Positions 5,538 to 56,089 of a stretch of 64,000 bases of DNA are shown here, in pieces (position 1 is the stretch's first letter; every line of letters starts with the position of its first letter). The DNA lies in contig NC_043024.1 of assembly GCF_006345805.1 (NCBI RefSeq), positions 17,174,001-17,238,000 on the forward strand, given 5' to 3'. The translations under genes were made by a program, and so were the position numbers. This DNA comes from Octopus sinensis. Taxonomy: Eukaryota. The notes beneath the pieces are model-generated. The model saw only the letters and a list, made by a program, of their open reading frames with translations, was not told the origin of the DNA and searched no databases.

Positions 5538-5945
5538 TTTCTCTCTTTCTCTTTCTCTTGTTTCAGTCATTTGACTGCGGCCATGCTGGAGCACTGCCTT
5601 TAGTCAAGCAAATCGACCCTTGAATTTATTCTTTGGAAGCCCAGTACTTGTTCTATCGGTCTTTTTTATCGACCCGCTAAGTTACGGGGATGTAAACACA
5701 CCAGCATCAGTTGTCAAGCGATGTTGGGGGGAAAAACACAGACACACAAACATATACACACACATACATATATACATATATGTGACGGGCTTCTTTCAGT
5801 TTCCATCTACCAAATACGCTCACAAGGCTTTGGTCGGCTCGAGGCTATAGTAGAAGACACTTGCCAAGGTGCCATGCAGTGGGATTGAACCTGGAACCAT
5901 GTGGTTGGTAAGCAAGCTACTTACCACACAACCACTCCTGTGCCT
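5538..5945 (-). mobile_element. SINE-B
   Basis: Reverse complement matches 3328-3736. Confidence 0.85.
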
Positions 5946-17489: not shown

Positions 17490-18135
17490 ATAAAATACAT
17501 AATTATGTGTGTGTTGATGCATGTGTATTTATTTGTGCATATGCGTGGTTATGCAGATATCTGCATAAACGTACCTGTGTGCATATGTGTGTGTGCTTGT
17601 GCATGGTCTGTGCAATTATGGGTCTCTGCGTCATTGTGTAAGCTGAGATGTGTATGTCTGTGTGTGTGTGTGTGTGCTTGTACATGTGTCTATATAAACG
17701 TATGTATGTATGCATGTGTATATGCTATGTAAACGTAGCTGTGTGTGTGTGTGTGTCTGTGTGTGTGTAATTATGTTTTGGATTATAAATCCCCAAGCAA
17801 TAATTTTCTATTGATAAGGTGAAATAAATCACACAGAATCACAAGCCTAAATAAACACACATACACAGAATACATATTGATATTACATGCACACACACTA
17901 ACATATACACTAGCACACACACATATCTATATATATATATGTGTGTGTATATGTATGTGTGTATATATATGTTTGTATATATATATGTATGTGTGTGTAT
18001 ATATATATATACATATATATATATATGTATATATATGTATGTATATATGTATGTATATATGTATGTATATATATGTTTGTATATATATGTATGTATGTAT
18101 ATATATATGTATGTATATATATGTTTGTATATATA

Positions 18136-18180
<45 letters not shown>

Positions 18181-18420
18181 AGCTTTATACTTATGTGTGT
18201 GTTTGTGTATACACACACACAAATTCATAAATATATACATACATACAGATATTTAAGATGGTATATTTACATATATATGGATCTATATATATAGTACATA
18301 TGTATATATATAAATATATATATATGATCGTGTGTATACTTATATGTAGTTGGATCTATATAAATATATGTATGTGTGTGCGTGTCTGAATGCACATGTA
18401 TATACCAATGCATGTGTACG
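17490..18420. repeat. Long compound (TG)/(TA)/(TATG) microsatellite field
   Basis: Seen directly. Confidence 0.9.
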
Positions 18421-18544
18421 TGAGACTCGTTTTATGGCCAAAACCTTGGGAGACAAGAAATATAAATTTATGAATTTGAAATGAATTAATGCGTGGAGTT
18501 ATAGCAACACAAACAACAACACAAGAGGTGGAGATATTGAAAGT

Positions 18545-19050
18545 GATGGTGGTCTGATGGGGGCTTGGTGATGGTGGTCGACATGGTTGAGACTGTTGTT
18601 GTTGGTGGTGGTGGTGGTGGTAGTGGTGATGATGGTGGGTGTAATGATGGGGGTGTTGCTGTTGTTGGTAGTGGTTGAAGTGGTGATGGTGGTGATGATG
18701 ATGGCTGCGAGGATGGAGGTGTTGTTGTTGTTGGTGGTGGTTGAAGTGATGGTAGATATGATGCTGGCTGTAAGGATGGCGGTGTTGTTGTTGTTGGTGG
18801 TGGTGGTGGTGGTGGTAGTGGTGATGATGGTGGGTGTAATGATGGTGGTGTTGCTGTTGTTGTTGGTGGCGGTGGTGATGGTGGGTGTAATGATGGCGGT
18901 GTTGCTGTTGTTGTTGGTGGTTGAAGTGATGGTAGATATGATGCTGGCTGTAAGGATGGCGGTGTTGTTGTTGTTATTATTGTTGATGTTGCTGTTGGTG
19001 GTGATCGATATAACGATGGAGGTGAGATGTTGTTGTTGGTGTTATTTATA
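18545..19050. repeat. Higher-order GTG/TTG/ATG trinucleotide minisatellite
   Basis: Block gtggttgaagtgatggtagatatgatgctggctgtaaggatggcggtg occurs twice (~18738, ~18917); a second block recurs 3-4 times. Confidence 0.85.
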
Positions 19051-21044
19051 ATAATTTCTCAGATTGATAACAGTAAACAATGAAAATAATCAAAACAAAA
19101 ATTAGAGCAACAACAGACAGTGCAGTAACTGATGCACAAAAACAACAAAAGCAATACCAACTTCATCATCCAGTATCATAACAACAGCGATAGCTACAAT
19201 GGCAACAACCATAGTACACAACAACTGCAACAACAACAACAACAGCATAATCAAGCACTACAAAAACACTAACAACAACAACAACAATCACATTTTCTTT
19301 CAACTGTTTTCAGTATTTCTTCCAACATTGGAAATTTCCAGAGTTGAATTACAAGATAATCTGGGTGGGTGTTTGCGTGTGCGCTTGTTGCATGTGTATG
19401 CGTATATGTGTGTGTTTGTTTGTTTATTTATGTGTATATGTGTGTTTGAGCGTGTGTGTGTATATTTGCATGTGTATGTATATATATGTGTGTGTGTGTG
19501 TGTTGTGCATGTGTTTGTGTGTATATTTGTGTGTGTGTGTAGTTGAGTGTGTGTTAGTAAGTGTGCATATATGTGTGTTTATATATATATACATACATGT
19601 GCAGGTGTGTATGTATGTGTTTGTGTGTGTGTGTGTGTATATATATATATACACGTGTGTGTATGTATGTGTGTGTGTGCATGTTTGTCTGGTGGTATAA
19701 GTGTGTTTTTTTGTTTGTGGCATGATTAGTATTTGTGTATGGTTCTGTGTGTATATGTACATACATAAGTGTATGTGTGCTTTTGTGTGTGTGTGTGTGT
19801 CTGTATTTTGGATATATTTCATCTTTACATAGAGTTTATCTCCAGTTTGGTCATTGCCGCTACAGCAATGATGATGATGATGGGGGGTGGCAGTGGCAGC
19901 AGTGGCACTGGTGGTGGTGATGGTGGTGGCAGCAGTCGGGGCGGTGGTGGTGGTGGTGCACCTCCTCTGTGCAATTTATTACTTTGACGCCAACGTTGAT
20001 TCCAGTGTTTGATGCTGTTACGTTTAATTGAGAGATTCTAATGAGGAGAATGATTCTTGACTTTTCTTGGTTGTCTCAGTGGCTGCCTGTGGCTTTGGAA
20101 GATAGGATCCTGAGCAACAGAAATATTCAATAATATCATCACCCCCCCACCATCATCATCATCACCACCTACCTCATCTTCATTGTAATCATCATCATCA
20201 TCACCACCACCATAATTGTTATAAAGTGGTATTTTCCACAGTTATAATGTGTGGCCACTGTTGTGTCTGTAGCTGTCGTATCTACTCTAGTAGCCACGAT
20301 ATTTTCTTGGTATCGGATGGAGTGTATCTCTTTCTATACCGGAATGGTAATACACTGCTTCAGCTATTGTGCTGCCACTGATAGCTCTGCAAGACACTGA
20401 ATTTGAAACATCTACCTTGACTGTGACTCGAACTCGTCTATAACACGTAACTAGCACTTAACTCCAACTGAGAACTTGTATAAGAACTCTACAATGATTA
20501 ACACATGACTCCCCTACTGGTTGATGTCATATTACTTTATAGTGGCTGGGTCATACCACTTGTCCCTTGAGATGGATGTATAATTTCCACTACAACAATA
20601 ATCATTTTCATTATAATTATTGTCATCACCATCATCCCCATCACCACCTTCATTGTTATTATTGTCATCATCATCATTTTTTTCCACATGAACTTCCCCA
20701 TGCTTCACTGGTGAAACGAGTACATTCGCGGAGAGAGTTTCTTGTGGTCAGATATCCTTCTTCTTACTAACTGTCATTTTTTTCCAAACGAAATAAATGT
20801 TCTTCTTGACTATTGAACAACAAACAACCTGGACATGGTTTTACAGTGAACTGGAAACAAACAACACCGTGTGAACGAGCCTTTTGTTTACAACCAGTCA
20901 ACACACAGTAAGATAAATCAGATATACACTCACCCACATTCATAAAGGCATGCTCACACACACACATACATACATATGCTTGCATGTGTATGTGTGTGTA
21001 TGTATTTATATATGTGTGTTTGTATATATATCTTCCGTCTTCTA

Positions 21045-21475
21045 GCTTTTCTTGTTTCAGTTATTTGAGTGTGGTCATGCTGGGGCACTGCCTTGAAGGG
21101 TTTTAGTCTAACACATTGATCCTAGGATTTCTTTTAAAGTCTCATACTTATTCTTTTGGCCTCTTTTGTTAAAGCTCTAGTCTCATACTTATTCTTTTGG
21201 CCTCTTTTGTTAAAGCTCTAAGTTACCGGGACATAAACACACCAACACCGGTGTCAAGCAGTGGTACAGGACAAGCACAGACACAATGATACACGGACAC
21301 AGATATATACATATAGGCATATACGATAGGTTTCTTCCAGTTTCTGCCTACCCAATCCACTCACAAGGCTTTGGTTGGCCCATGGCTATAGCAGAAGACA
21401 CTTGTTCAAGGTAACATACAGTGGGACTGAACCTGGAACCATGTGGTTGGGAAGCAAGCTTCTTACCACATAGCA
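21045..21475 (-). mobile_element. SINE-B with an internal ~40-bp tandem duplication (21141-21220)
   Basis: ctcatacttattcttttggcctcttttgttaaagctcta present twice. Confidence 0.8.
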
Positions 21476-28084: not shown

Positions 28085-28790
28085 CTATGACTATGGTTCC
28101 ACTTGGCTTGACAAGTCTTCTCAAACACAGCAAACTGCCAAAGATCTCAGTCATTTGTTATTGCCTCGTGAGACCCAATATCCAAAGATCATGCTTCACC
28201 ACCTCATCCTATGTCTTCCTGGGTCTACCTCTTCCACAGGTTCCCTCCGCAACTTGAGATCAGCACTTCTTTATGCAGCTGTTCTCATCCATATGCATCT
28301 CATGACCATACCAGTGCAGTCTTCTCTTTTGCATACCACATCTGATGCCTCTTATGCCTAACTTTTCCTTCAAGATACTTACACTTTGTCATACATGCAC
28401 ACTGACAGAGGCCCTTAGTTACAAACAAAGGTAGAAACTCTGAACTTTGCCCAGCGTATTCTTATTCTCGCAGCCAAACTCTCAAAGCGTCCACCTCCAC
28501 TGCTGACTTGGTCACCGAGATAATAAAAACTATCAACTACTTCTAGGCATCACCACTGGCATTCAACAGAGTCTATTTTCTGTACATTACTTGTGTGTAT
28601 TGTATCTGTATATTTGTCACACACAAAGACTGTTTTCCCTGTTAACCTTCCTCTGATATTGTTGCACCTCTTATGTATCCATAGCTTGCACTGGGTACAC
28701 CTTATTGAGTTTCTACCTACGTCTTTTCTACATATCAAGCACGGCCATCTTCCTGAAGGGATTTGTGATTCACCTGCTTTCCTACTTGCT
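28085..28790 (-). pseudogene. RTE-clade LINE ORF 3' fragment with a Cys/His-rich insertion
   Basis: ICRKDVGRNSIRCTQCKLWIHKRC followed by LEVVDSFYYLGDQVSSGGG..RIRIRWAKFR; stops and frameshifts downstream. Confidence 0.8.
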
Positions 28791-30679
28791 AAGACTACAG
28801 TCTTTATCCATTTATCTATCTATTTATCTATCTATCTATGAACTCGGAAAAAATTTAAAACAGAGAGTTACTTACTTGCAAATAAATGTGTTAACATGTG
28901 ACATTATTGACCGAGGTTACCATGGTCTTTTCCGTAGACTTTTCTTTCCATAGATAAACCTTTTCTGTTTCCTCCTTTACACTTTACATCATGACATTTC
29001 TGTGATACACGATCCCTATTGATGGTTTTTTTTTTTACGATCCCTTTTGATCGAAAACCTACCCCCCCTTTTTTCTTCCCCAAACGAAAAGCTCTACTTT
29101 GTAATTTGTACCCTCTGTGTTCAGCTCTGTATGGCTAATAAAGAAGCATATCTATCTATCTCTATGTATGTATGTATGTATGTATGTATGCATGTATGCA
29201 TATATGCATGTATGTATGTATGTAAGTATGTATGTATGTATGTATATAATACATCTACAAGTGTGGTGTAAGACAAACAAAAGACAGATACTACATTAGG
29301 ATTTGAACCATGCATCTATAAGTTGCCAAGCGTATGGTTCACTAGTTGCACCAAATAACATTTCAACAGCTTTAGCTGTCGACATAGCTGTTGTAAAGTG
29401 GTTTTTCATTGGATAATAATGGTAATGTCTAATCTCCTTTCATTTCCCCTGACAACTGCAGACAATTTAGCAGCTGTACTTGGAGTCTTCTATGTATATG
29501 CATGCATGCATGCATGCATGTATGTATATATGTATTAATGTATATGCACACAAGCACATATATTTAATAACAGCTACATGTATACATAGAAACCCATGAA
29601 CTCGCGCACACACACACACACACATATGCATTTATAATTCATAATTAAAAATAACTATTTATGTTATGAGTAATTACAGTTCATATTCTGAAGTTGCTCT
29701 TAGTCATAAACCTAGGAAACTTCCAGTGTAACACTGGAATCTGATGTAGTTAATTAAGGCAGCCTGTCTTTGTCTGGTGGCGAAGTGGTTATCAAGTTGT
29801 CTGTGATTCTCATGGGATGTGTGAAAAGACTTGGTAACAAAGACTTATTAAGTAAAAACCAAAATGTTTATATTTGTTGTGTTGATAGTGAAATTTCTTC
29901 TGAGGCTACTTGGTATAATTAGATACATAGTCACCTGACAATTATTGTATTAATAGTCATCCAACTTCTTCAGTTGGTGACACTATGAGGTTCCAGAACT
30001 CTCATAGTGCTTTCAAGTGGCTAAAATGAGTTGATGAATTACCAGCTCTATCAGCTAGCAGTAATCTGCTAATAGGATTTGTTGACCCTTAGACTGACCA
30101 TTGGCTGAAGAAGCTCTTCTACCCAGACTGTGTCATCTAGTTTTGCCAAATGAAGGTCAGTCCACCAAACTTCACATCTACCATGCTGCTCCTCGTGACT
30201 TCACTGTGGCCCTCACTCAAAGATTTTTCATCGCTAAGGCTATCTCCTCTAAATACCCACTATTGGATGGCTGTTGACTCATACAAGTTCCTCCACACTT
30301 TGATGGGTTTTGTTTTTCATCTTGCAGGGTGTCCAAATCACTCTCCTCGTCAAGTAAGTTTGGTGAGGCTGTTGGTTTACTCGCCAACAACCCAACCATG
30401 TGACAGGGTCGTACTGGGTTACATGTCATCAGTAGCACTTGTTGAGAGTGACCTGACAAGGGATAGATTTATTGTTGATTATCATGGCTGGATTTCATTT
30501 TTTTTTCTATTTTATGCCACACTTAGACCTGAACAATGACAACTACTATTGTAAGTGTAAAAACAACAACAAGAACAACTACAACAACAACAAGATTAAT
30601 AAATAACTGAGATGCCTGGCACCTTGCTGTACTCAAGAAACTCATGTTTCGTAGCAGAAGTGTTAAGGCTGCTCCGCTT

Positions 30680-32075: not shown

Positions 32076-33279
32076 GGTGATGGTGATGGTGATGATGAAC
32101 ATCTACAACTACACTTGCAACAACCAAACTATCCTGAAATAGTAACCACAACAACAACAGCATGAACACTGCCATATACCATCAGACATCTATATTAAAT
32201 GTATAAGACATCTTTGATAAGGAGCGACCAATAAAATCAATGATGCTGTGGGTGTCATTCATTAACAGAATGCATTGAAACATGAAGGATCAGTTTTGAC
32301 ATGAAGTGACCCCTTAATTTTCTGGAATTGACAACTGAAAGAGTTTCTGCTCAATTAAATAACCCCAGTCATTAATAAATTAGACTTAAAGTGGTGATTT
32401 CCTGTACAGCGGGGGTGGGATTAGTTGGTGTTTGGGGGATACAATTATAAATTAGATTCAAAAAGATTCTAAATTATTAGCGGGAGGGAGCAAGGGAGAA
32501 ATGCTACCTTTTTGAGGTAAGATTCCATTTATTGTCATAGCAACAAAGAAACTCTTTAGTGTTATTTTTATAAATTAATTTGATCTTTACATAAAAATTA
32601 TTCTTAGGCAGAAATTAAGATTAATTTCCCCATATTGTTAATTAATATAAATACCATACGTGTGTGTGTGTGTGTGTGTGTGTGTATACATGTGTGTGTG
32701 TTTGTGTATAAATTACACTGATGAACCTGCAGATATTTACATGCGTAAATATTAACAAGCGAAACCATTGGTAATCATTTTTTTTTTATTTCATATATTT
32801 TCATTTGTCTTGCTCATTTAAAATTTTTTTTCTTGAGAACACACTCTTCATGGTTAGGTGATTTGAGATCTATATCTAGCATTAATTGGAGTCCACTTTG
32901 GTGGTCATTCCTCTTAATTTTGTGTATGTATATATATATATAATATATATATATACATATATATATGTACATATATATATTTGTACACTTATGCACATTT
33001 GTTTTTCCATGAATTATACGTGATATCTATGCAGATGTGTATATATATATATATGTATATGTATGTTATATACATATCAGGATATATATATATATATATA
33101 TATATTAATATATATATATGCATGTGTGTGTGTGTGTATGTATGAGTTGTCAATATCATCAACTGCAATGCCCATCATGAAACCAATGGTATCAGGTCGC
33201 TAAGAATGAAATGTCTGACTTTGAACTGAAAATTTTATTTTATTTTATCTCAACAAAAAGCAATGCAGTTAATCAAAGT

Positions 33280-33453
33280 ATGAATGGTTGAATGTCCAAA
33301 TCCAAGCTTCTCTGCTAGTTTCTCAACAGATACAATGGGATTTTGTTCCACCAGGGTTTGCAGGACATCCTCATCAAACTCTACAGATCTTCCAGGACAA
33401 GGCTCGTCTTCTAGGCTATAGTTTCCAGCTTGGATTTTCTGGAACCATCATTG
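33280..33453 (-). pseudogene. Mariner transposase N-terminal (HTH) fragment
   Basis: WFQKIQAGNYSLEDEPCPGRSVEFDEDVLQTLVEQNPIVSVEKLAEKLGFGHSTIH matches the mariner WF.RF..G..SLED.PR.GRP...LA..L...STI pattern. Confidence 0.8.
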
Positions 33454-40618: not shown

Positions 40619-40721
40619 TATATGATTTAATATATTCTATTTCAGCCCTTCTCTTCACACAACACCATCTGTGTGTTACTTTCTTAATCATAAGTAGTCA
40701 TTAAAATCTTACAAAAGTTGG

Positions 40722-40945
40722 CAAACTGGCAGAATCATCAGCATGCTGGGCAAAATGCTTAGCAGCCTAACATCTGTCTTCATGTTCTGGATTCAAATTC
40801 CATCGAGGTTGACTTGGTTTTTCATTCTTTCAGGATCAATAAAACAAGTACCAGTTGAATCTTGGATGGCAGGTGGTGGGGTCAATGTAATCGACTTAGC
40901 CCCTCTCCTGAAATCGCTGGCCTTATGCCTAAATTTGACATTATT
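40722..40945 (+). mobile_element. SINE-A (diverged)
   Basis: Head and core recognisable. Confidence 0.75.
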
Positions 40946-40961
40946 ACCAAAATCTAATGAG

Positions 40962-41102
40962 TTTTATGTTTTAATTCTTTGTTGTTGATTTTGTTCTTGT
41001 TTCTATTTCATTTCAAATAATGTATTTTATTTTTGCCTTTGTTTCTTTTTCCAGGTAAGTGACTTTTACAAAGAATTGTTGCCATTCGAACACACAGTAA
41101 GG
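40962..41102 (+). other. Candidate recursive splice site (AG|GT at 41054/41055) with a 42-nt cryptic or micro-exon 41055-41096
   Basis: 91-nt AG-free pyrimidine-rich zone ending tttgtttctttttccag, immediately followed by GTAAGT; second donor GTAAGG at 41097. Confidence 0.55.
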
Positions 41103-41914
41103 AAACCTCTTGCCCAGTTGTTGTTTAGGCCATCAGGCCATTCTTGATTAAAGCAGCAGACTTTTTGGTAACAGCCATTCCAGCCATGACCAACCTGTCA
41201 TTGTTTAAGGTATGATGTATCTAAGACTACAATCTCCTAGAATCATATTTCTCTCCATATTTAAGGTGGGGATGTGGTGAAGAGGATGAGTTACTTTTAG
41301 GTCATAGATTTGACCCAAACATTTGCAACAGAATGAGCTCTGCAAATGTTACCCAAGGAGGGTCAGTTTTGGAGGGCTTCAGATAAGTGATGGCTTTAGT
41401 ACACCACCCAAGAACATTCAAGGATGGTACCCACCAACAGTCTTCCACACTATTTCTGTCTATAAAATTCCACTCATAAAGTTTAGCTTTAGCCAAAGCT
41501 ATGGCAGAAAACATTTTCCCCAAAGTGACATGCAATGAGATTGAACCTGGTCCGCATGGGTGTAACACAAACTCCTTAACTGCACAACCTTGCCTGTTGC
41601 TCCATCTACAGTCTTTACTCATGTATCATACATCCATCCAGATCAGGTGATTTTCCCCGGCCAATGTAAATCTTCCATGCCATATGTCTGGTCTGGATTT
41701 TAATCACATTGGTCTTTCATTCACTGAAATATCTCATCTGCAGATGCTATGGATACAGATGAGGAGAACAGTTCACTAAGTGACCTGGTTGATCCTGACT
41801 GTTGACAGTTTGTTATCTTGCTCATCTTCTCAGCATCTTGTGATATTTGTTATTGGTCTCAATAAATTCATCGGCTGAAATAGTTTATGCTTCACAACTA
41901 GTGATGGTGTTTTT

Positions 41915-45069: not shown

Positions 45070-45445
45070 TGGCTGTGTGGTAAGTAGCTTGCTTACCAAC
45101 CACATGGTTCTGGGTTCAGTCCCACTGCATGACACCTTGGGCAAGTGTCTTCTACTATAGCGTCGGGCTGACCAAAGCCTTGTGAGTGGATTTGGTAGAT
45201 GGAAACTGAAAGAAGCCCATCGTATATATGTATATATATATGTATGTGTGTGTATATGTTTGTGTGTCTGTGTTTGTCCCCACAACATCACGTGACAACC
45301 GATGCTGGTGCCTTTACGTCCCTGTAACTTAGCGGTTCAGCAAAAGAGACAGGCTTACAAAGAATAAGTCCTGGGGTCGATTTGCTCGACTAAATGCGGT
45401 GCTCCAGCATGGCTGCAGTCAAATGACTGAAAGAAGTAAAAGAGT
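45070..45445 (+). mobile_element. SINE-B
   Basis: Full length. Confidence 0.85.
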
Positions 45446-46289: not shown

Positions 46290-49270
46290 AATCACAAGAT
46301 TTTAGAATAAAATAAGTTTGCATTTTGAAGATTTGGAGTAAATCTTCAAAGTGCAAAGATACTTAGTCAAAAAGAAAAGATTTGGGACAGTAATAGAAGA
46401 GTTGAAACAGTGTATCATAGCAGTTACAGGCAAGATCTCCAGATATCAGAAATGAATAGACCAATATCAACAGAATAGATTATTTGAGACAGCTCAGTGA
46501 AGATTTTGTAGCCAAATAAATAGTGGAGAACAAAGTACTGAAGATGAGAAACCTAATGCAGAAGAAGCTAGAAAGTTCTGAAGTAATATTTGGGATAAGC
46601 CAGTCAATCATAATGGAGATGCAGTATGGCTAACGAAAGTGAGGGAAGAAGAAGTGAGTGATAAGCAGCCAGATCTAAGACTAACTAGTGCATTAATGAG
46701 TAAAGTGTTAGGAAAAATGCCAAATTGGAAGGGCCCAGGACCACATTTAGTTCAAGAGTACAAGTTAAGAAATTTAGTAGTTTACATGGGGGCTGGGGGA
46801 ACAACTTCAGGATTGCCTTAATTAAGGAATAATACCATATTGGATTACTAGAGGGAGGACAATACTTATTATGCAAGATAAGACCCATGGTAATACAGCT
46901 AACAACTATTGACCAATCATTTGCTTACCATTAGTGTGGAAACTGTTAACAGGAATGCTTTCAGAAAGCATTTACAAGCACCTTGACAATCAGAATTTAC
47001 TGCCAGAAGAACAGAAAAGTTGCAAGAAGAAGGCTAGAGGAACACACAATCTATTATACACAGACAAAGCAGTTCTAAATAAAGTAAAAGCTAGAAGAAA
47101 AATCTAACAATTACATGGAAAGATTATAGGAAAGCCTACAGCATGATCTCACACTCATGGATAAGTGAATGTTTGAGTATATTCAGTATAGCAGACAACA
47201 TAAAAGAATTAATTAGCTTTAGCATGAAAAAATGGATAGTAGATCTCTACTGAGATGACACACTCCTAGAGAAAGTAAATATCAAAAGAGGAATTTTCCA
47301 GGGGGACACATTACCCTCTTCAATATTTGTCTTATGTTTGATCCCCCTCATTTGAATATTAAGGAAGGTAAAGGCAGGGTATCAATTTAGAAATAGTAAG
47401 GGGAAAATTCACCATTTGCTCTACATTGATGATCTGAAACTTTAGTAAGAATGAAAATGAGATAGATCCCTTATTACAAACTGTAAGACTCTTCAGCAAA
47501 GATGTAGGCATGGAATTTAGCATAGATAAGTGTGCAATATTAATCATGAGAAGGGGACAGGTAGTCAACAGTGAAGGCATCCAATTACCAGATGGCCAGA
47601 CAATAAAATCATTAAAAGGAGAAGAGAGTTATAAGTATCTAGGAGTATTAGAATCTGACAGAGTACTAGCTACAGAAATGAAAACAAATATTGAGAAGGA
47701 GTACATCAGAAGGGTGAGGAAGCTAAATGGTCTGAATCTAAGGAAGGCTGTAAATACTTGGGCAGTATCATTACTGGTTCAGTGGTTAGAGCGTCGAGCT
47801 TACGATCGTGAGATTGTGAGCTCGAATCCCAGACCGGGCTGCGTGTTGTGTTCTTGAGCAAAGCACTTTATTTCACGTTGCTCCAGTTCACTCAGCTGTA
47901 GAAATGAGTTGCAACGTCACTGGTGCCAAGCTGTATCGACCTTTGTCTTTCCCTTGGATAACACTGGTGGCGTGGAGAGGGGAGGCTGGTATGCATGGGC
48001 GACTGCTGGTCTTCCATAAACAACCTTGCCCGGACTTGTGTCTAGGAGGGTAACTTTCTAGGTGCAATCCCATGGTCATTCATGACCGAAGGGGGTCTTT
48101 ACCCTTTATCATTACTTAGATACTCAGCAGCTTTTGTAAGTTGGACAAAAACTGAATTAGCAAAGCTACACAGAAGAACTAGGAAGAAATTCAATATGAA
48201 TGAAGGACTCCTCCCAAGGGCAGGAGTAGCAAGATGATACCTACCAAGAAAGGAAGGGGAAAGAGGATTAATATCAGTAGAAGACTGTGTGGAGTTAGCT
48301 AGAGGAGATATAGACTCCTATGTAGGTAATTGGGAAGAAAGTTTATTAAGAGCTGCTAGAGTCATATCATGACATAGGGAAACTGGAAACCCAAACAAAA
48401 TTAAAAACCAGAAAAAAGAACAGAAATTATCTGACTGTTTGGAGAAGGTGTTGCATGGTAGATTCCCTAAGATAGTTGCAGCAAATAGTAGTAGTGAGGC
48501 ATGGCTATGGTTGCAGAAAGGAAAACTGAAAAGAGAGACAGAAAGTTTTTTAGCAGCAGCACAAGATCAAGCATTAAGAACTAATTGGATAAAAGCCAAG
48601 TTAGACAAAAACTAAGTAGATTCCCAATGATAGTTATGCAAATTAAAAGAGGAAAGTGTTATTCATATAGAAAGTGAATGTAGCTTGCTGGCACAGAAAG
48701 AATACAAGAAAAGACATGGCAACCTAGGGAGAATAATCCACTGGAAGTTATGTAGAGAGCTAGGATTTGAACATACTGATAAATGGTATGAACATGAACC
48801 TAGTAAAGCACTAGAAAGTAAGAAATACAAGATGTTGTGGGACGTTAACATTCAGACTGACAGAGTAATAGAAGCTAGAAGGTCTGGTTTAGTAGTAGTA
48901 GACAAAGAGAATAGAAATTGCCAAATAATTGACTTTACAGTCCTAAATGATGAAAAATATGAGAAGTATAGAAAAAATAGCCAAGTGCCAGGACCTATCC
49001 ATTGAATTACAGAGACACTGGAAAGTGTGGGTACAATGTATCCCAGTAGTTGTTGATGCATTGAGAACTATCCCTAAAGATTTGAACAGATGGATAGAGG
49101 AAATAGGCATAAAACCCAGTTTAGTAGCTCCAGAAAGCAATGTTACTAGGGACAGCTGGGATACTTAGGAGGGTTCTTGGCATCTAAGGTTACTTGTTGT
49201 TAGGAATTTTTCTTCTCCAACAGTTTAATCTCTTGTATGTGTATGAAAATAATAATAATAATAATAATCA
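46290..49270 (+). pseudogene. Decayed R4/Dong-clade LINE (RT, zinc knuckle and restriction-like endonuclease) with (TAA)n tail
   Basis: IEELKQ..QNRLFET; WKDYRKAY..HSWI; RGIFQGD; HLLYIDDLK; YKYLG; KRHGNLGRIIHWKLC; LWDVNIQTD; GTAGILRRVL; many stops and frameshifts. Confidence 0.9.
47776..48106 (+). mobile_element. Young SINE-C inserted into the R4 RT domain with a 10-bp TSD
   Basis: tatcattact at 47766-47775 and 48107-48116; removing the insert restores NTWAVSLLRYSA. Confidence 0.9.
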
Positions 49271-51124: not shown

Positions 51125-52370
51125 TACCGAACTAGTTTCAACAATACTTTTTGTTTATCGATGGTAAAAATTTAGAATTATGAATTAGAAAAACATGTTT
51201 CAAATTTTCAATGTTGACAAATTTAAATGTTCATAAAAAGACAAATTTAGAATTATGAATTAGAAAAACATGTTAAAAAATTTCGGTGTTGTCAAGTTTA
51301 AATGTTCATAACAGTCAATAATATTAAAACTGTGCATCAATTTGTTTGAATGTACAAAGCTCATTAGTGTTAGTGGTGATTGACAAGAAATGAATATCCT
51401 CAAAGTTTCAGTCATACTGAGTTAAGAGGGAAAAAACAAGGGAAAAAGGAAGATAGTAAAAAAAAGGGATTTGGTTTACAATTTCTCTGATCCTCATTCC
51501 GTTGTATGTAGGAACTTTCGCTTGTAACTGTGTGTTTTGGAATCCGGTCTATTCATAATTTTTTCAACAAGTGGATCTGATTTTTGGTTTGTTAAAATAC
51601 TGGTGACGTCTTGTTTTTCCGGGCTTCCCTGTGGAGAATGGTTATCTGTCATTCCAGTTGGTTGATTTTCTTAAAGGGTCATTTTGTTGTATTTGCTGAA
51701 GTTCAGTTTTGATTGGTCTAGAGTTAGGTGATGTCAGCAACTGGTGTTTGTAAAATTTTATTGGGCTAGAAATAGGTGACATCGGCAACTGATGTTCATA
51801 TGGTGTTATTGTATGGCGATTTGGAGTTGTGGTTTCAAAACCTAGGTAGAAGACTGTTACTAAAGTTTTAAAATTGTTTGTTGTTCCTGGTTGTATTTTT
51901 GTGGAGAAATTGAGTCTTTTTTCCCTTTTTCTCTTTAGTATTTCTTTCTTCTTTCTAAAGGTTATTGAGCTGTGGTTTATATTTTTTAATGAGTATGCTT
52001 TCCCGATTTAAACAGAATTGGGTTGAAGTGTTTCCGGTGCATTAATAGAGAGGGAAGGTTTGATACTTCAGGTTTATGCTTTCAGGGCATTGGTCTAGGT
52101 ATTTGCTTACAGGAATTTTCATAGTCCTGGAATTGTTGCCTGTGCACTGTTAATCTGTCCCTCAAGGTTAAACTAGTTTGATCTATGTAGTTTCCACTAC
52201 ACCCTCCACATTTGAGAACGTAGATTAAGTTCCTCGAAGCACAGGTGAAATGATTTCTTATGGTAAAAGTTTGACCTGACTTAAATTTGTATGTTGGGCC
52301 AGATACATGTTTTTCTAATTCATAATTCTTAATTTTTACCATTGATAAACAAAAAGTATTGTTGAAACTT
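51125..52370 (-). mobile_element. Penelope-like element fragment: GIY-YIG endonuclease 3' part with inverted terminal segments
   Basis: FTCASRNLIYVLKCGGCSGNYIDQTSLTLRDRLTVHRQQ (52082-52342) and downstream RESILIKKYKPQLNNL-stop; 51133-51200 is the reverse complement of 52303-52370. Confidence 0.8.
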
Positions 52371-53130
52371 GCCTATATTTTTTCCTGCATGGAAATACAC
52401 CCCCTCTTTTGTTATATATATATATACATGGATGGGTGGATTAAACTGTTTTGATCCATATATGTAACTCACAATAAATTTGTTGAGTGCCCCTCTTTCA
52501 TTTGTCCACTCACTCGTATATATATATGTGTGTTTGTGTGTATGTGTGTATTATTTTGAATTATTTAATAACAGCTGGATTTGTTTCCATGCAAGTTTTC
52601 TAAGCTTGTTAGATGAACCTAACTCATCAGCCTTGCAGAACTGAATGAAGGGAAGTCCAAGATAGTTTCTGGGTACTGGACTACTGCTGGTGACTCGAGG
52701 TGACATGGTGTTGCCAGTTTGGCAGTAACATCATTACCATTCAGGATTAGTCAAATCATGAGCTGGGACAGGATTTTGGTGGTGACACTTTGTCTCAAGA
52801 AAAAGGGTTGGTTTGCTAGGGACAGCAGCACATTGACATGTATGTGTGTGCATGCATGTACGTGTATGCTTAGTGTGTAAGTACGTGTGTCTGTTATGTG
52901 TGTGTGCATGTATGTGAGAGTTTGTGCATGTGTATGCAAAACTTTGCATGTATTAGCAACATCAGTTTGTTGGTGTATGTTTACGTGTGTATACCTAATG
53001 AGCACAGTTATTAGTTAATCTGATTACTTAATATCTTGCATGAAACCGATTGGTAAATTCTGCTCTATAATACTGTATACTTTGATTAATATATAAACCA
53101 TGTAATTTGCACCATTGGTGACGTCCTCTA

Positions 53131-53996: not shown

Positions 53997-54136
53997 CATG
54001 TGCCCCCCTCTCTCTCTCTCATATATATATATTGGTAAAAACAGTAAGATAACAAAAGAAAGAAAGAGACCTCAATATTATGTAAATAGAGGAAATTTAT
54101 CTATACAATAATATGTGACATTTATTCGGTAGCCAA

Positions 54137-54197
54137 GATAAAACTCTGAGTTTCACATGCCGAGGTGGAAATCCACAACACCATCTCTTCGGTTATC
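54137..54197 (-). ncRNA. Degenerate hammerhead-like motif in a TA-flanked fragment
   Basis: GATAA-CCGAAGA-...-GAAAC-TCAGA-GTT-TTATC: 5-bp stem I and near-palindromic stem III; U4 is C and stem II is imperfect. Confidence 0.4.
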
Positions 54198-54289
54198 TGG
54201 CCATCTGAAAAACGCTATGAAAAAAGACCGTTATACAAAGGGAAATTACTGTGTTATAGTCTGCTACTTATATACTTATATACCCTAAC

Positions 54290-54770
54290 TGTGGAAGATG
54301 TAGGCCCGGGAAGACATGGGATGAGGTGGTGAAGCATGACCTTTGAACATTGGGCTTCACAGAAGCAATGACAAGAGGCTGAGGCCTTTGGAGATATGCT
54401 GTGATTGGGAAGACCCAGCAACTAAAGTGAGATCACAGCCACACATGTCCAGCCCAGTTACGAATACCCCTGATATGTCGGGTGATATGATGAGTCAAGT
54501 AAAACCCTGACTGGGTCCCATGCCAGTGGCAAGTATAAAGCACAATCCAATCATGGTCGATGCTTGGTCTGCCTGACTAGTTTCTGTGCCAGTGGCACAT
54601 AAAAAGCACCATCTGACTGGTCCCCGTGCCAGTGGTACGTAAAAAGAACCCACTACATTCTTGGAGTCGTTGGCATTAGGAAAGGCACCCATCTGTAGAA
54701 ACATTGCCAGATCAGATAGGAGCCTGGTGCCAGCATGGAAAACAGACGTTAAACTATGATGATGATGATA
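54290..54770 (+). mobile_element. RTE LINE ORF end plus 3' UTR and (GAT)n tail
   Basis: KTWDEVVKHDL..TLGFTEAMT..LWRYAV then RTE tail motifs. Confidence 0.8.
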
Positions 54771-55369
54771 TATATATGTGCATATGTATATATATATATA
54801 TATATATATGCACACACACTTATACACATATGCATCAGCAAAATCTTCTTCAAATCACACCCTCTTAAGACAATGTGAGATGGTCATGGCTGGAAGTACT
54901 TCAATCAAGTTGGATTGACACAGGGTTAAACAGTTATAAGAACAACTACAACAACCTGCATGTATGCTATATGGTCACCTAGCCTGTTAGAAATAGCAGC
55001 TAAATCTCCTTCAAATCACAGCCTCCTTTCTAAAATACAAAACTGAGTATATCTTGTAGTCCAAGATATACTTAGATAAGCTGGTTCTGCTTAAACAGCA
55101 CTGACCTGGCTCCAAACAACACAACAACAATAATAATGACAACAATATTGCAGATGCACTATTACATAGAAGCACTCTTACACACCTCTTCTCACCCCAG
55201 CACCCACCTTTCCATACTGTCACCACCACCACCACCACATACTCCACCAAACACCAATCTTAAAAGGTTCTGCTGCCACCTTATCTCTACCCCGCTCTGC
55301 CACCATCTCCACACCATGTTGCTTCATTTCTTGCAATCCATAAACATTATCAACATCTCTCCTCCTCCT

Positions 55370-55800
55370 CGTTTCTCCTCCTCCTCGTTTCTCCTCCTCC
55401 TTGTTTCTCCTCTTCCTACCTCTAGCATCCTCTTTCTCTCTGTCTCTCACCTTATTACTCCATACACTTTCGTTTCCTCTTCTCTCTCTTCCTCCTCTTC
55501 TCTCTCTTCCTCTTCTCACTATCCCTTCCTCCTCTTCTCTCTGCTTCCTCTTCTCTTTCTTCCTCTTCTCACTATCCCTTCCACCTCTTCTCTTTCTTCC
55601 TCTTCTCTCTCTTCCTCTTCTCACTATCCCTTCCTCCTCTTCTCTTTCTCATCTCTTCTCTCTCTCTTCCTCCTCTTCTTTTCTTCCTCTTCTTTTCTTC
55701 TTCCTAATCTCTCTCTTCCTCTTCTCTTTCTTCCTCTTCCTCCTCTTCTCTCTCTCTCTCTCCCATTCTTTTTATCCTTCTATGTTTCTCTCCACCCCTC
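55370..55800. repeat. CT-rich polypyrimidine low-complexity tract
   Basis: Seen directly; explains the 305-aa S/L/P/F ORF. Confidence 0.9.
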
Positions 55801-56089
55801 TCCATCCTCTTCACTCTATCATTTTCTCATCCATTTCTCACATGCATTTATTTTCTCACTTTTTCTTTCTCCATCAACAAAACTAACACCATTAAAACCA
55901 CCTTTCTCACCATCACCACCACCACCACCACTACCACCATTGCGCTACCACCACCACCACCATCTTCACCATCGCTCCCACCACCAAACCACTTTTGCTG
56001 CATTGGGAACATGCGGCACTGACCCCCTATGTCCACCGGGATTCTCGGATTAACTCAAATGAAAAAAATATATATATAAAAAGAGAAAA

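What the first reader, a model, noticed from the sequence alone, without database searches (positions are those of the whole stretch)
40962..41102. Textbook recursive-splicing (ratchet-point) signature with a 42-nt in-frame cryptic exon
Seen, outside any repeat: a 91-nt AG-free, T-rich zone ending ...tttgtttctttttcCAG, followed with zero spacing by the perfect donor GTAAGT (41055-41060). A second donor (ACA|GTAAGG) lies 42 nt downstream, and the enclosed segment is open only in phase 0 (VSDFYKELLPFEHT). Established: Drosophila ratchet points and vertebrate RS-exons have this AG|GT plus short cryptic exon layout in very long introns. Inference: the window lies in a giant + strand intron removed stepwise, with an optional micro-exon switch. 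I am not aware of recursive splicing being described in cephalopods. It is the strongest splice signal seen in the 64 kb.
Basis: partly seen in the sequence, partly recalled or inferred. Interest (0 to 1): 0.8.

Follow-up and report, generated by a model that had tools for sequence, protein, structure and literature searches.

The report
Strong recursive-splice-like motif, use unproven
A perfect back-to-back "end of intron / start of intron" signal really sits at 41055 in repeat-rich octopus non-coding DNA and is the best splice-like signal in the window. Nothing available here shows that the strand is transcribed or the site conserved, so it is a candidate recursive splice site, not a demonstrated one.

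Summary
The sequence is as described. There is a 91-nt AG-free, T-rich tract (40962-41052), then CAG|GTAAGT (GT at 41055), then a second donor ACA|GTAAGG 42 nt downstream, and only frame 0 of the 42 nt is open. With approximate splice-site matrices, 41055 ranks first of 128,000 positions both as acceptor and as donor. A site this strong is expected 0.001-0.018 times per 64-kb window, so the core motif is unusual. The extras are not. The window holds 141 AG-free runs of 91 nt or more, frame 0 is open in 51% of random 42-mers, and a comparable downstream donor occurs by chance in about 14-21% of cases. The site lies in about 490 nt of non-repeated DNA between two interspersed repeats. No host exon, RNA family or protein match was found. 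No transcript data or related genome could be reached. TE-derived ORFs match Octopus bimaculoides proteins, which supports a cephalopod origin. In a genome of about 2.7 Gb, roughly 50-750 equally strong sites are expected by chance. My estimates are about 0.5 for an unused chance motif, 0.3 for a used recursive site and 0.12 for an ordinary exon boundary. If real, it would be a new member of a known kind.

The parts
40707..40938 (+). Context: a diverged copy of the window's abundant SINE-like repeat. It ends 24 nt before the T-rich tract.
   Evidence: Self-BLAST finds 22 loci in the window (11 +, 11 -) at 66-77% identity to this copy.
40962..41052 (+). AG-free, T-rich zone: the polypyrimidine tract plus AG-exclusion zone of the candidate acceptor.
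   Evidence: 91 nt with no AG and 65% T. No tandem repeat by TRF and no period-3 signal. AG-free runs of this length are common in the window: 141.
41026..41030 (+). Branch-point-like TTTAT, with its A at 41029, 25 nt upstream of the AG.
   Evidence: Read directly. It fits YTNAY with U at -2, but such pentamers are frequent in A/T-rich DNA, so this is inference only.
41052..41060 (+). [quoted passage not shown]
   Evidence: Unique 9-mer in the window. Rank 1 as both acceptor and donor. Expected 0.001-0.018 per window.
41055..41096 (+). 42-nt candidate RS-exon, open only in frame 0.
   Evidence: It is part of a 52-codon stop-free stretch at 40989-41144. No Pfam hit. No credible protein match for the 30-aa extension.
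41094..41102 (+). Second, weaker donor ACA|GTAAGG (GT at 41097).
   Evidence: 5.9 bits, rank 331 of all GT sites. A donor this good or better within 30-120 nt is expected in about 21% of cases, derived. GTRAG is expected in 14%.
41428..41608 (+). Context: a second interspersed repeat that bounds the unique interval on the right.
   Evidence: 10 further copies in the window at 66-71% identity with a sensitive BLAST.

Best explanation
The motif is real and splice-competent on paper. The most likely single reading is that it arose by chance and has no selected role. On this reading, a T-rich low-complexity tract next to a SINE happens to abut the 9-mer CAGGTAAGT in repeat-rich octopus non-coding DNA. 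The site is then either not transcribed on the + strand or not used.

Shown: the sequence itself, its rank in the window, its rarity per window, and the absence of any coding, RNA-family or repeat identity.

Inferred: the genome-wide base rate. At 0.001-0.018 chance sites per 64 kb, a genome of about 2.7 Gb (size from memory) holds roughly 50-750 equally good sites. Most of these would lie outside sense-strand introns.
For: - Chance expectation is 0.001-0.018 per window, which scales to tens to hundreds genome-wide.
- All supporting 'extras' are at chance level.
- No exon or gene was found on the + strand in 64 kb.
- No protein carries the putative exon peptide.
- The + strand of this window carries 8-fold more strong pyrimidine tracts than the - strand, which raises the local chance rate.
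- In mouse brain only 19-20 of millions of sense AGGT sites are recursive (PMC8797253).
Against: - One site being the best acceptor and the best donor among 128,000 positions has a per-window probability of roughly 0.1-2%.
- It has TT at -5/-6, as do 99.5% of fly ratchet points (10.1101/006163).
- It has a weaker donor 42 nt downstream, as in fly RS-exons (PMC8605326).
- It lies in non-repeated DNA.
- The window is exon-free with a T>A skew on the + strand.
- 63% of fly introns over 40 kb carry such sites (PMC6110457).
Confidence: 0.5

Rival explanations
1. A genuine recursive splice site (ratchet point) in a very long + strand intron. The 3' splice site at 41054 would be recognised by exon definition together with the 41097 donor. 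The upstream exon would be ligated to 41055, which regenerates a perfect GTAAGT donor. That donor would outcompete the weaker ACA|GTAAGG donor, so the 42-nt RS-exon would be skipped and the rest of the intron removed in a second step.
For: - The core motif ranks first in the window and is rare by chance.
- TT at -5/-6 and a prominent pyrimidine tract (10.1101/006163).
- The ratchet-point donor (12.8 bits) is stronger than the RS-exon donor (5.9 bits). This is the arrangement that causes skipping in flies (PMC8605326).
- The 42-nt exon is close to the roughly 50-nt fly norm.
- No exon in 64 kb, and a T>A skew on the + strand.
- The site is in non-repeat DNA.
Against: - There is no evidence of a gene, of transcription or of conservation.
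- Equally strong chance sites are expected genome-wide in the tens to hundreds.
- Recursive splicing is rare in mouse despite many long introns (PMC8797253).
- No second recursive-like site exists on the + strand of the window.
- Recursive splicing is not documented in the taxon.
Confidence: 0.3
2. An ordinary splice acceptor of an unannotated exon whose first bases merely happen to read GTAAGT. The exon could be an alternative 42-nt micro-exon, a poison or terminal exon running to the stop at 41145-41147, or an exon of a non-coding RNA.
For: - The acceptor is the strongest in the window.
- Frame 0 stays open for 30 codons from 41055 before a stop.
- In mouse, 46 of 84 candidate recursive AGGT sites turned out to be unannotated exons (PMC8797253).
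Against: - No Pfam match.
- The only database hit to the 30-aa peptide is a translated tandem repeat. Its score is inflated by repeated 22-aa stretches of 24 bits or less, and there is no DNA similarity.
- A perfect donor at the first base of an exon would tend to cause re-splicing.
Confidence: 0.12
3. A repeat-derived signal. The pyrimidine tract would be either a decayed (NTT)n tail of the adjacent + strand SINE, or the antisense of an A-rich tail of a - strand retroposon occupying 41055-41427. Many copies in the genome would then carry the same motif.
For: - The tract starts 24 nt after the SINE body ends.
- Other SINE copies in the window carry (ATT)n or (ATC)n tails.
- A short TTG TTG TTG ... 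TTG TTC TTG run lies inside the tract.
Against: - No tandem repeat by TRF.
- No period-3 autocorrelation (lag-3 z = -0.35).
- 40941-41427 has no other copy in the window.
- No relative of the 106-aa - strand ORF among 5.8 billion clusters.
Confidence: 0.08

Closest known systems
Drosophila intronic ratchet points with cryptic RS-exons (Ubx, kuz, Bx and others; Duff et al. 10.1101/006163; Joseph & Lai PMC8605326; Pai et al. PMC6110457)
   Same: Juxtaposed (Y)nCAG|GTAAGT, TT at -5/-6, and a short downstream cryptic exon (42 nt against about 50 nt) closed by a donor weaker than the regenerated one.
   Different: Fly sites are defined by RNA intermediates, by location in long sense-strand introns and by ultraconservation of the core; none of these is shown here. 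Fly cryptic RS-exons are usually out of frame, whereas this one is a multiple of 3. The taxon is an octopod.
Vertebrate RS-exons in long neuronal genes (Sibley et al. 2015, as summarised in PMC8797253 and PMC8605326)
   Same: AGGTAAGT core, a strong pyrimidine tract and exon definition through a downstream donor.
   Different: Vertebrate sites lie in first or second introns over 51 kb of genes over 294 kb and are highly conserved. They number only about 20 in mouse brain. Host gene and conservation are unknown here.
Expressed recursive micro-exons (Ubx mI/mII, 51 nt each; PMC8605326)
   Different: Ubx micro-exons are ultraconserved, including at wobble positions, and are present in mRNA. Here there is no protein or transcript evidence, and the open frame is at chance level (51%).
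Cryptic or pseudo splice sites and TE-assisted exonisation (general knowledge; the Alu poly-U tract as acceptor)
   Same: A low-complexity T-rich tract beside an interspersed repeat supplies a strong acceptor-like signal in non-coding DNA.
   Different: The tract could not be shown to derive from the SINE. The abutting perfect donor is not a feature of exonisation.

Membership tests
Recursive splice site / ratchet point | [quoted passage not shown] | tested here: met
   CAG|GTAAGT with 14/16 pyrimidines upstream. Rank 1 as acceptor and as donor in the window.
Recursive splice site / ratchet point | TT at positions -5 and -6 (99.5% of fly ratchet points; 10.1101/006163) | tested here: met
   The sequence ...TTTTTCCAG| gives T at -5 and -6. 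This is weak evidence, because 44% of all fly introns have it too.
Recursive splice site / ratchet point | A short cryptic RS-exon closed by a downstream donor weaker than the regenerated donor (PMC8605326) | tested here: met
   The exon is 42 nt; the donors score 5.9 against 12.8 bits. A comparable donor is expected by chance in about 14-21% of cases.
Recursive splice site / ratchet point | Location inside a long intron, on the sense strand of a transcribed gene | tested here: inconclusive
   No host exon on either strand in 64 kb; only TE-like ORFs. T>A skew of 3.6% on the + strand, with C>G. No annotation or flanking sequence was reachable.
Recursive splice site / ratchet point | Splicing intermediates: exon-to-ratchet-point junction reads, sawtooth read density, recursive lariats | not testable with these tools
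   No transcriptome data are accessible.
Recursive splice site / ratchet point | Evolutionary conservation of the SA|SD core above that of its flanks | not testable with these tools
   No related genome could be reached. The 28-mer at the site has 0 matches in metagenome contigs. A neighbouring 106-aa ORF has no relative. The nearest LINE relatives are 66% identical or less.
Expressed recursive micro-exon (Ubx mI/mII type) | Frame-preserving length with an open frame | tested here: met
   42 nt with frame 0 open. The chance level is about 1/3 x 0.51.
Expressed recursive micro-exon (Ubx mI/mII type) | Presence of the encoded peptide in a known protein or mRNA | tested here: inconclusive
   The 30-aa frame-0 ORF from 41055 was searched against 1.84 billion representatives. 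The only hit is a translated tandem repeat with an inflated score. A 14-aa exon is below detection, and isoforms may be missing from the library.
SINE-tail or retroposon-tail derived pyrimidine tract | The tract is continuous with the repeat and shows a microsatellite or tail signature, or recurs with other copies | tested here: not met
   There is a 24-nt gap after the SINE. TRF finds nothing. There is no period-3 signal. Other copies carry (ATT)n tails rather than this tract.

The most novel reading that the evidence does not exclude
This is a functional recursive splice site in a giant intron of an octopus gene. That would be the first ratchet point described in a cephalopod, and in any lophotrochozoan in the literature held here. 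It would carry a frame-preserving 42-nt RS-exon that could be switched on when the regenerated donor is suppressed.
Probability: 0.25. Interest if true: 0.55.

Novelty: new member of a known kind. Interest (0 to 1): 0.3.

Why it matters
Recursive splicing is established in flies, where it is common in introns over 40 kb, and in vertebrates, where it is rare and mostly seen in long neuronal genes. Octopus genomes are large, repeat-rich and have long neuronal genes.

Showing that cephalopods use ratchet points would indicate which regime a third major bilaterian lineage follows. It would also bear on whether stepwise intron removal is an ancestral answer to long introns.

A single unverified motif cannot establish that. 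Its value is as a seed for a genome-wide test: counts of the motif by strand and intron length, combined with total RNA-seq.

Tried and rejected
1. **U1 snRNA gene or pseudogene on the - strand.** ACTTACCTGG is the reverse complement of the core, but there is no Rfam hit anywhere in the window.
2. **tRNA-like elements.** ARAGORN finds none.
3. **Tract as a decayed SINE-tail microsatellite.** TRF finds nothing and there is no period-3 signal.
4. **Fetching orthologous DNA through a neighbouring ORF.** The 106-aa ORF at 41302-41622(-) has no relative in 5.8 billion protein clusters.
5. **Exact 28-mer at the site in JGI metagenome contigs.** 0 matches. I did not use the permitted second scan, because no octopus DNA appeared to be in that collection.
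6. **Coding exon test.** The 30-aa ORF from 41055 gave one hit, P0121 (E 3e-11). P0121 is a 912-aa translation of a tandem repeat on an ENA metagenome contig. The score sums five or more stretches of 24 bits or less, and the DNA shows no significant similarity. I rejected it as spurious.
7. **Host exon hunt.** I took 162 non-repetitive stop-to-stop ORFs of 45 aa or more and scanned the 20 best against Pfam. Only a PHD finger at 28553-28819(-) passed its cut-off. Its relatives are multi-copy Octopus bimaculoides proteins, one of them named as a reverse-transcriptase-domain protein, so it is TE-derived and not a - strand host gene.
8. **SINE orientation bias as a strand indicator.** 11 + against 11 -, so it is uninformative.
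9. **Identifying the source assembly via a LINE relative.** This led to an anonymous ENA contig that is only 66% identical in the LINE.

Full report
**Observation**

- Positions 40962-41052 are 91 nt without a single AG (59 T, 13 A, 10 C, 9 G).
- The tract ends ...TTTGTTTCTTTTTCCAG at 41054 and is followed without spacing by GTAAGT (41055-41060).
- A second donor, ACA|GTAAGG, has its GT at 41097-41098, so the enclosed segment 41055-41096 is 42 nt.
- Only frame 0 of that segment is open (VSDFYKELLPFEHT).
- The 9-mer CAGGTAAGT, the full complement of the U1 5' end (established knowledge), occurs once on both strands of the 64 kb.

**Is it more than chance?**

I scored every GT and AG on both strands with approximate metazoan splice-site weight matrices. 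The matrices were written from memory, so they serve as a ranking device only.
- Position 41055 is the top acceptor (15.7 bits) and the top donor (12.8 bits) among 128,000 positions.
- The next-best juxtaposed sites total about 19 bits against 28.4.

Expected number of sites at least this strong, per window and both strands:
- 0.001 in 128 Mb simulated from an order-4 Markov model of the window.
- 0.005-0.018 when the window's real frequency of strong pyrimidine tracts is combined with the expected or observed counts of AGGTAAGT. That frequency is 0.8% of + strand positions, 0.1% of - strand positions, and 0.26% in unmasked + strand sequence.

So the core is a rare object at the scale of one window.

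The additional features that make it look 'textbook' carry almost no weight:
- The window contains 77 (+) and 64 (-) AG-free runs of 91 nt or more.
- Frame 0 is open in 51% of random 42-mers from this window, and divisibility by three has a 1/3 chance.
- GTAAG lies within 30-120 nt of a random point in 6.5% of cases, and GTRAG in 14%.
- The second donor scores 5.9 bits, rank 331. From that rank I derive that a donor this good follows a random point in about 21% of cases.
- A branch-point-like TTTAT sits at -25, but such pentamers are common in A/T-rich DNA.

**Surroundings**

The window is 36% G+C. About 20% is tandem repeat and about 41% matches other parts of the window at least twice.
- A diverged + strand copy of the dominant SINE-like family lies at 40707-40938. 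The family has 22 loci in the window, 11 + and 11 -, at 66-77% identity to this copy. The copy ends 24 nt before the T-rich tract.
- A second interspersed repeat begins at 41428.
- The motif therefore sits in about 490 nt (40941-41427) that has no other copy in the window. 'Outside any repeat' is true locally, but 64 kb cannot exclude a mid-copy family.
- I tested whether the tract is a decayed (NTT)n SINE tail, because other copies carry (ATT)n or (ATC)n tails. TRF finds no array and there is no period-3 autocorrelation, so this origin is not supported.
- No Rfam family and no tRNA occurs in the window. In particular, the - strand ACTTACCTGG is not part of a U1 gene.

**Gene context**

I found no host exon on either strand.
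- Of 670 stop-to-stop ORFs of 45 aa or more, 162 are non-repetitive and of normal composition.
- I scanned the 20 most protein-like against Pfam. Only a PHD finger at 28553-28819(-) passed its cut-off.
- Its closest relatives are several Octopus bimaculoides UniRef proteins at 67-89% identity, one of them named as a reverse-transcriptase-domain protein.
- It is therefore a multi-copy, TE-derived ORF and not a - strand host gene.
- A + strand LINE-like element lies at about 46.3-49.2 kb. Its relatives are 66% identical or less, in anonymous ENA assemblies, one of them next to an RVT_1 ORF.
- In unique sequence the + strand has 3.6% more T than A (z 5.4; 5.9% without the LINE), but also about 2-4% more C than G. 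This is a general pyrimidine excess. It is compatible with + strand transcription but not diagnostic of it.

An exon-free 64 kb fits a giant intron and intergenic DNA equally well.

**Is the 42-nt segment coding?**
- The frame-0 ORF continues for 30 codons from 41055 to a stop at 41145-41147. It belongs to a 52-codon open stretch that also covers the T-rich tract.
- It has no Pfam match.
- Against 1.84 billion representative proteins it gave one hit, P0121 (E 3e-11).
- P0121 is a 912-aa translation of a tandem repeat on a 9.4-kb ENA metagenome contig. The score is the sum of repeated 22-aa stretches of 24 bits or less each.
- The DNA shows no significant similarity: the best alignment is 68% over 66 nt, E 0.43.
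- I reject this hit. There is no evidence for a coding exon, although a 14-aa micro-exon is below the reach of such searches.

**Conservation and transcription**

Neither could be tested.
- The 106-aa ORF 250 nt downstream has no relative in 5.8 billion protein clusters.
- The site's 28-mer has no match in JGI metagenome contigs.
- No cephalopod genome or transcriptome is reachable with the tools.

**Comparison with what is known**

The architecture is that of published recursive splicing.
- *Flies:* ratchet points are juxtaposed SA|SD sites with a prominent pyrimidine tract. 99.5% have TT at -5/-6, as here (10.1101/006163).
- *Flies:* they need a cryptic RS-exon of about 50 nt closed by a downstream donor that normally loses to the stronger regenerated donor. 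These exons are poorly conserved and usually out of frame (PMC8605326).
- *Flies:* there are more than 500 such sites, and 63% of introns over 40 kb have at least one (PMC6110457).
- *Mouse brain:* only 19-20 sites were found among 28,382 transcribed long introns. They lie in introns over 51 kb of genes over 294 kb and are highly conserved. 46 of 84 candidates were simply unannotated exons (PMC8797253).
- *Cephalopods:* the held literature has no paper combining recursive splicing with octopus. The one paper that combines it with 'cephalopod' does so only through unrelated references.

**Weighing the readings**

These figures are inference.
- Genome-wide base rate: at 0.001-0.018 chance sites per window, a genome of about 2.7 Gb (size from memory) holds about 42,000 windows, so roughly 50-750 equally strong chance sites. 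Only about a sixth of them would lie in sense-strand introns.
- If octopus is fly-like, real sites of this strength could number in the hundreds, and the posterior for this one would exceed one half.
- If octopus is mouse-like, real sites would number in the tens, and the posterior would be about 10-20%.
- Weighting the fly-like case at about one third gives roughly 0.3 that the site is used recursively.
- I put an ordinary unannotated exon boundary at about 0.12.
- I put an unused chance motif at about 0.5.
- I put about 0.08 on a repeat-derived origin, which would be compatible with any of the other readings.

**Mechanism if the recursive reading is right (inferred)**
1. Exon definition pairs the 41054 acceptor with the 41097 donor.
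2. The upstream exon is ligated to 41055, which regenerates a perfect donor.
3. That donor (12.8 bits) outcompetes ACA|GTAAGG (5.9 bits), so the 42 nt are removed with the downstream intron segment.
4. Suppression of the regenerated donor would instead include 14 in-frame codons.

**Verdict**

The interpretation cannot be decided here. If true, it is a new member of a known kind in a new lineage, not a new mechanism. Locating the window in its annotated genome, stranded total RNA-seq and an octopod alignment would settle it quickly.

Noticed in passing
window 28553-28819 (-): An 89-aa ORF with a PHD finger (Pfam 27.1 bits, cut-off 24). Its best relatives are Octopus bimaculoides UniRef proteins at 67-89% identity, one named as a reverse-transcriptase-domain protein. 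It is a TE-derived multi-copy ORF, and it is the only tool-based evidence for the taxon.
   Followed up: yes
window about 46300-49200 (+): A fragmented LINE-like element made of several ORFs of 49-139 aa, with positive AT skew in this stretch. The 123-aa ORF has 128 relatives at 66% identity or less, all in anonymous ENA assemblies with long contigs. One of them lies next to an RVT_1 ORF (L001).
   Followed up: partly
window 52085-52372 (-) and 33253-33447 (-): From memory, these ORFs resemble a GIY-YIG endonuclease of Penelope-like elements and a mariner-type HTH. Pfam gives no hit for the first and only a sub-threshold HTH_32 match (17 bits) for the second.
   Followed up: partly
window 18001-20000 and 54001-56000: Strongly strand-asymmetric low-complexity blocks, with GC skew +0.49 and -0.40. 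The second block holds a 656-nt AG-free run starting at 55426 and 213 of the 523 strong pyrimidine-tract positions on the + strand.
   Followed up: partly
whole window: In unique (unmasked) sequence the + strand has T>A by 3.6% (z 5.4) and C>G by about 2%. Strong pyrimidine tracts are 8-fold more frequent on the + strand than on the - strand. This could reflect transcription, replication or repeat content; it is unexplained.
   Followed up: partly
window 41428-41608 and about 10 other places (e.g. 5800-5941, 21341-21465, 45071-45205): A second interspersed repeat of about 145 nt at 66-71% identity, in both orientations. Its identity is unknown.
   Followed up: no
L002 2001-4739 (ENA ERZ21939214 ctg3650l): A 912-aa 'protein', P0121, is the translation of a tandem DNA repeat with a period of about 52 aa. 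Summing its repeated weak stretches produced a misleading E-value of 3e-11 for a 30-aa query.
   Followed up: yes
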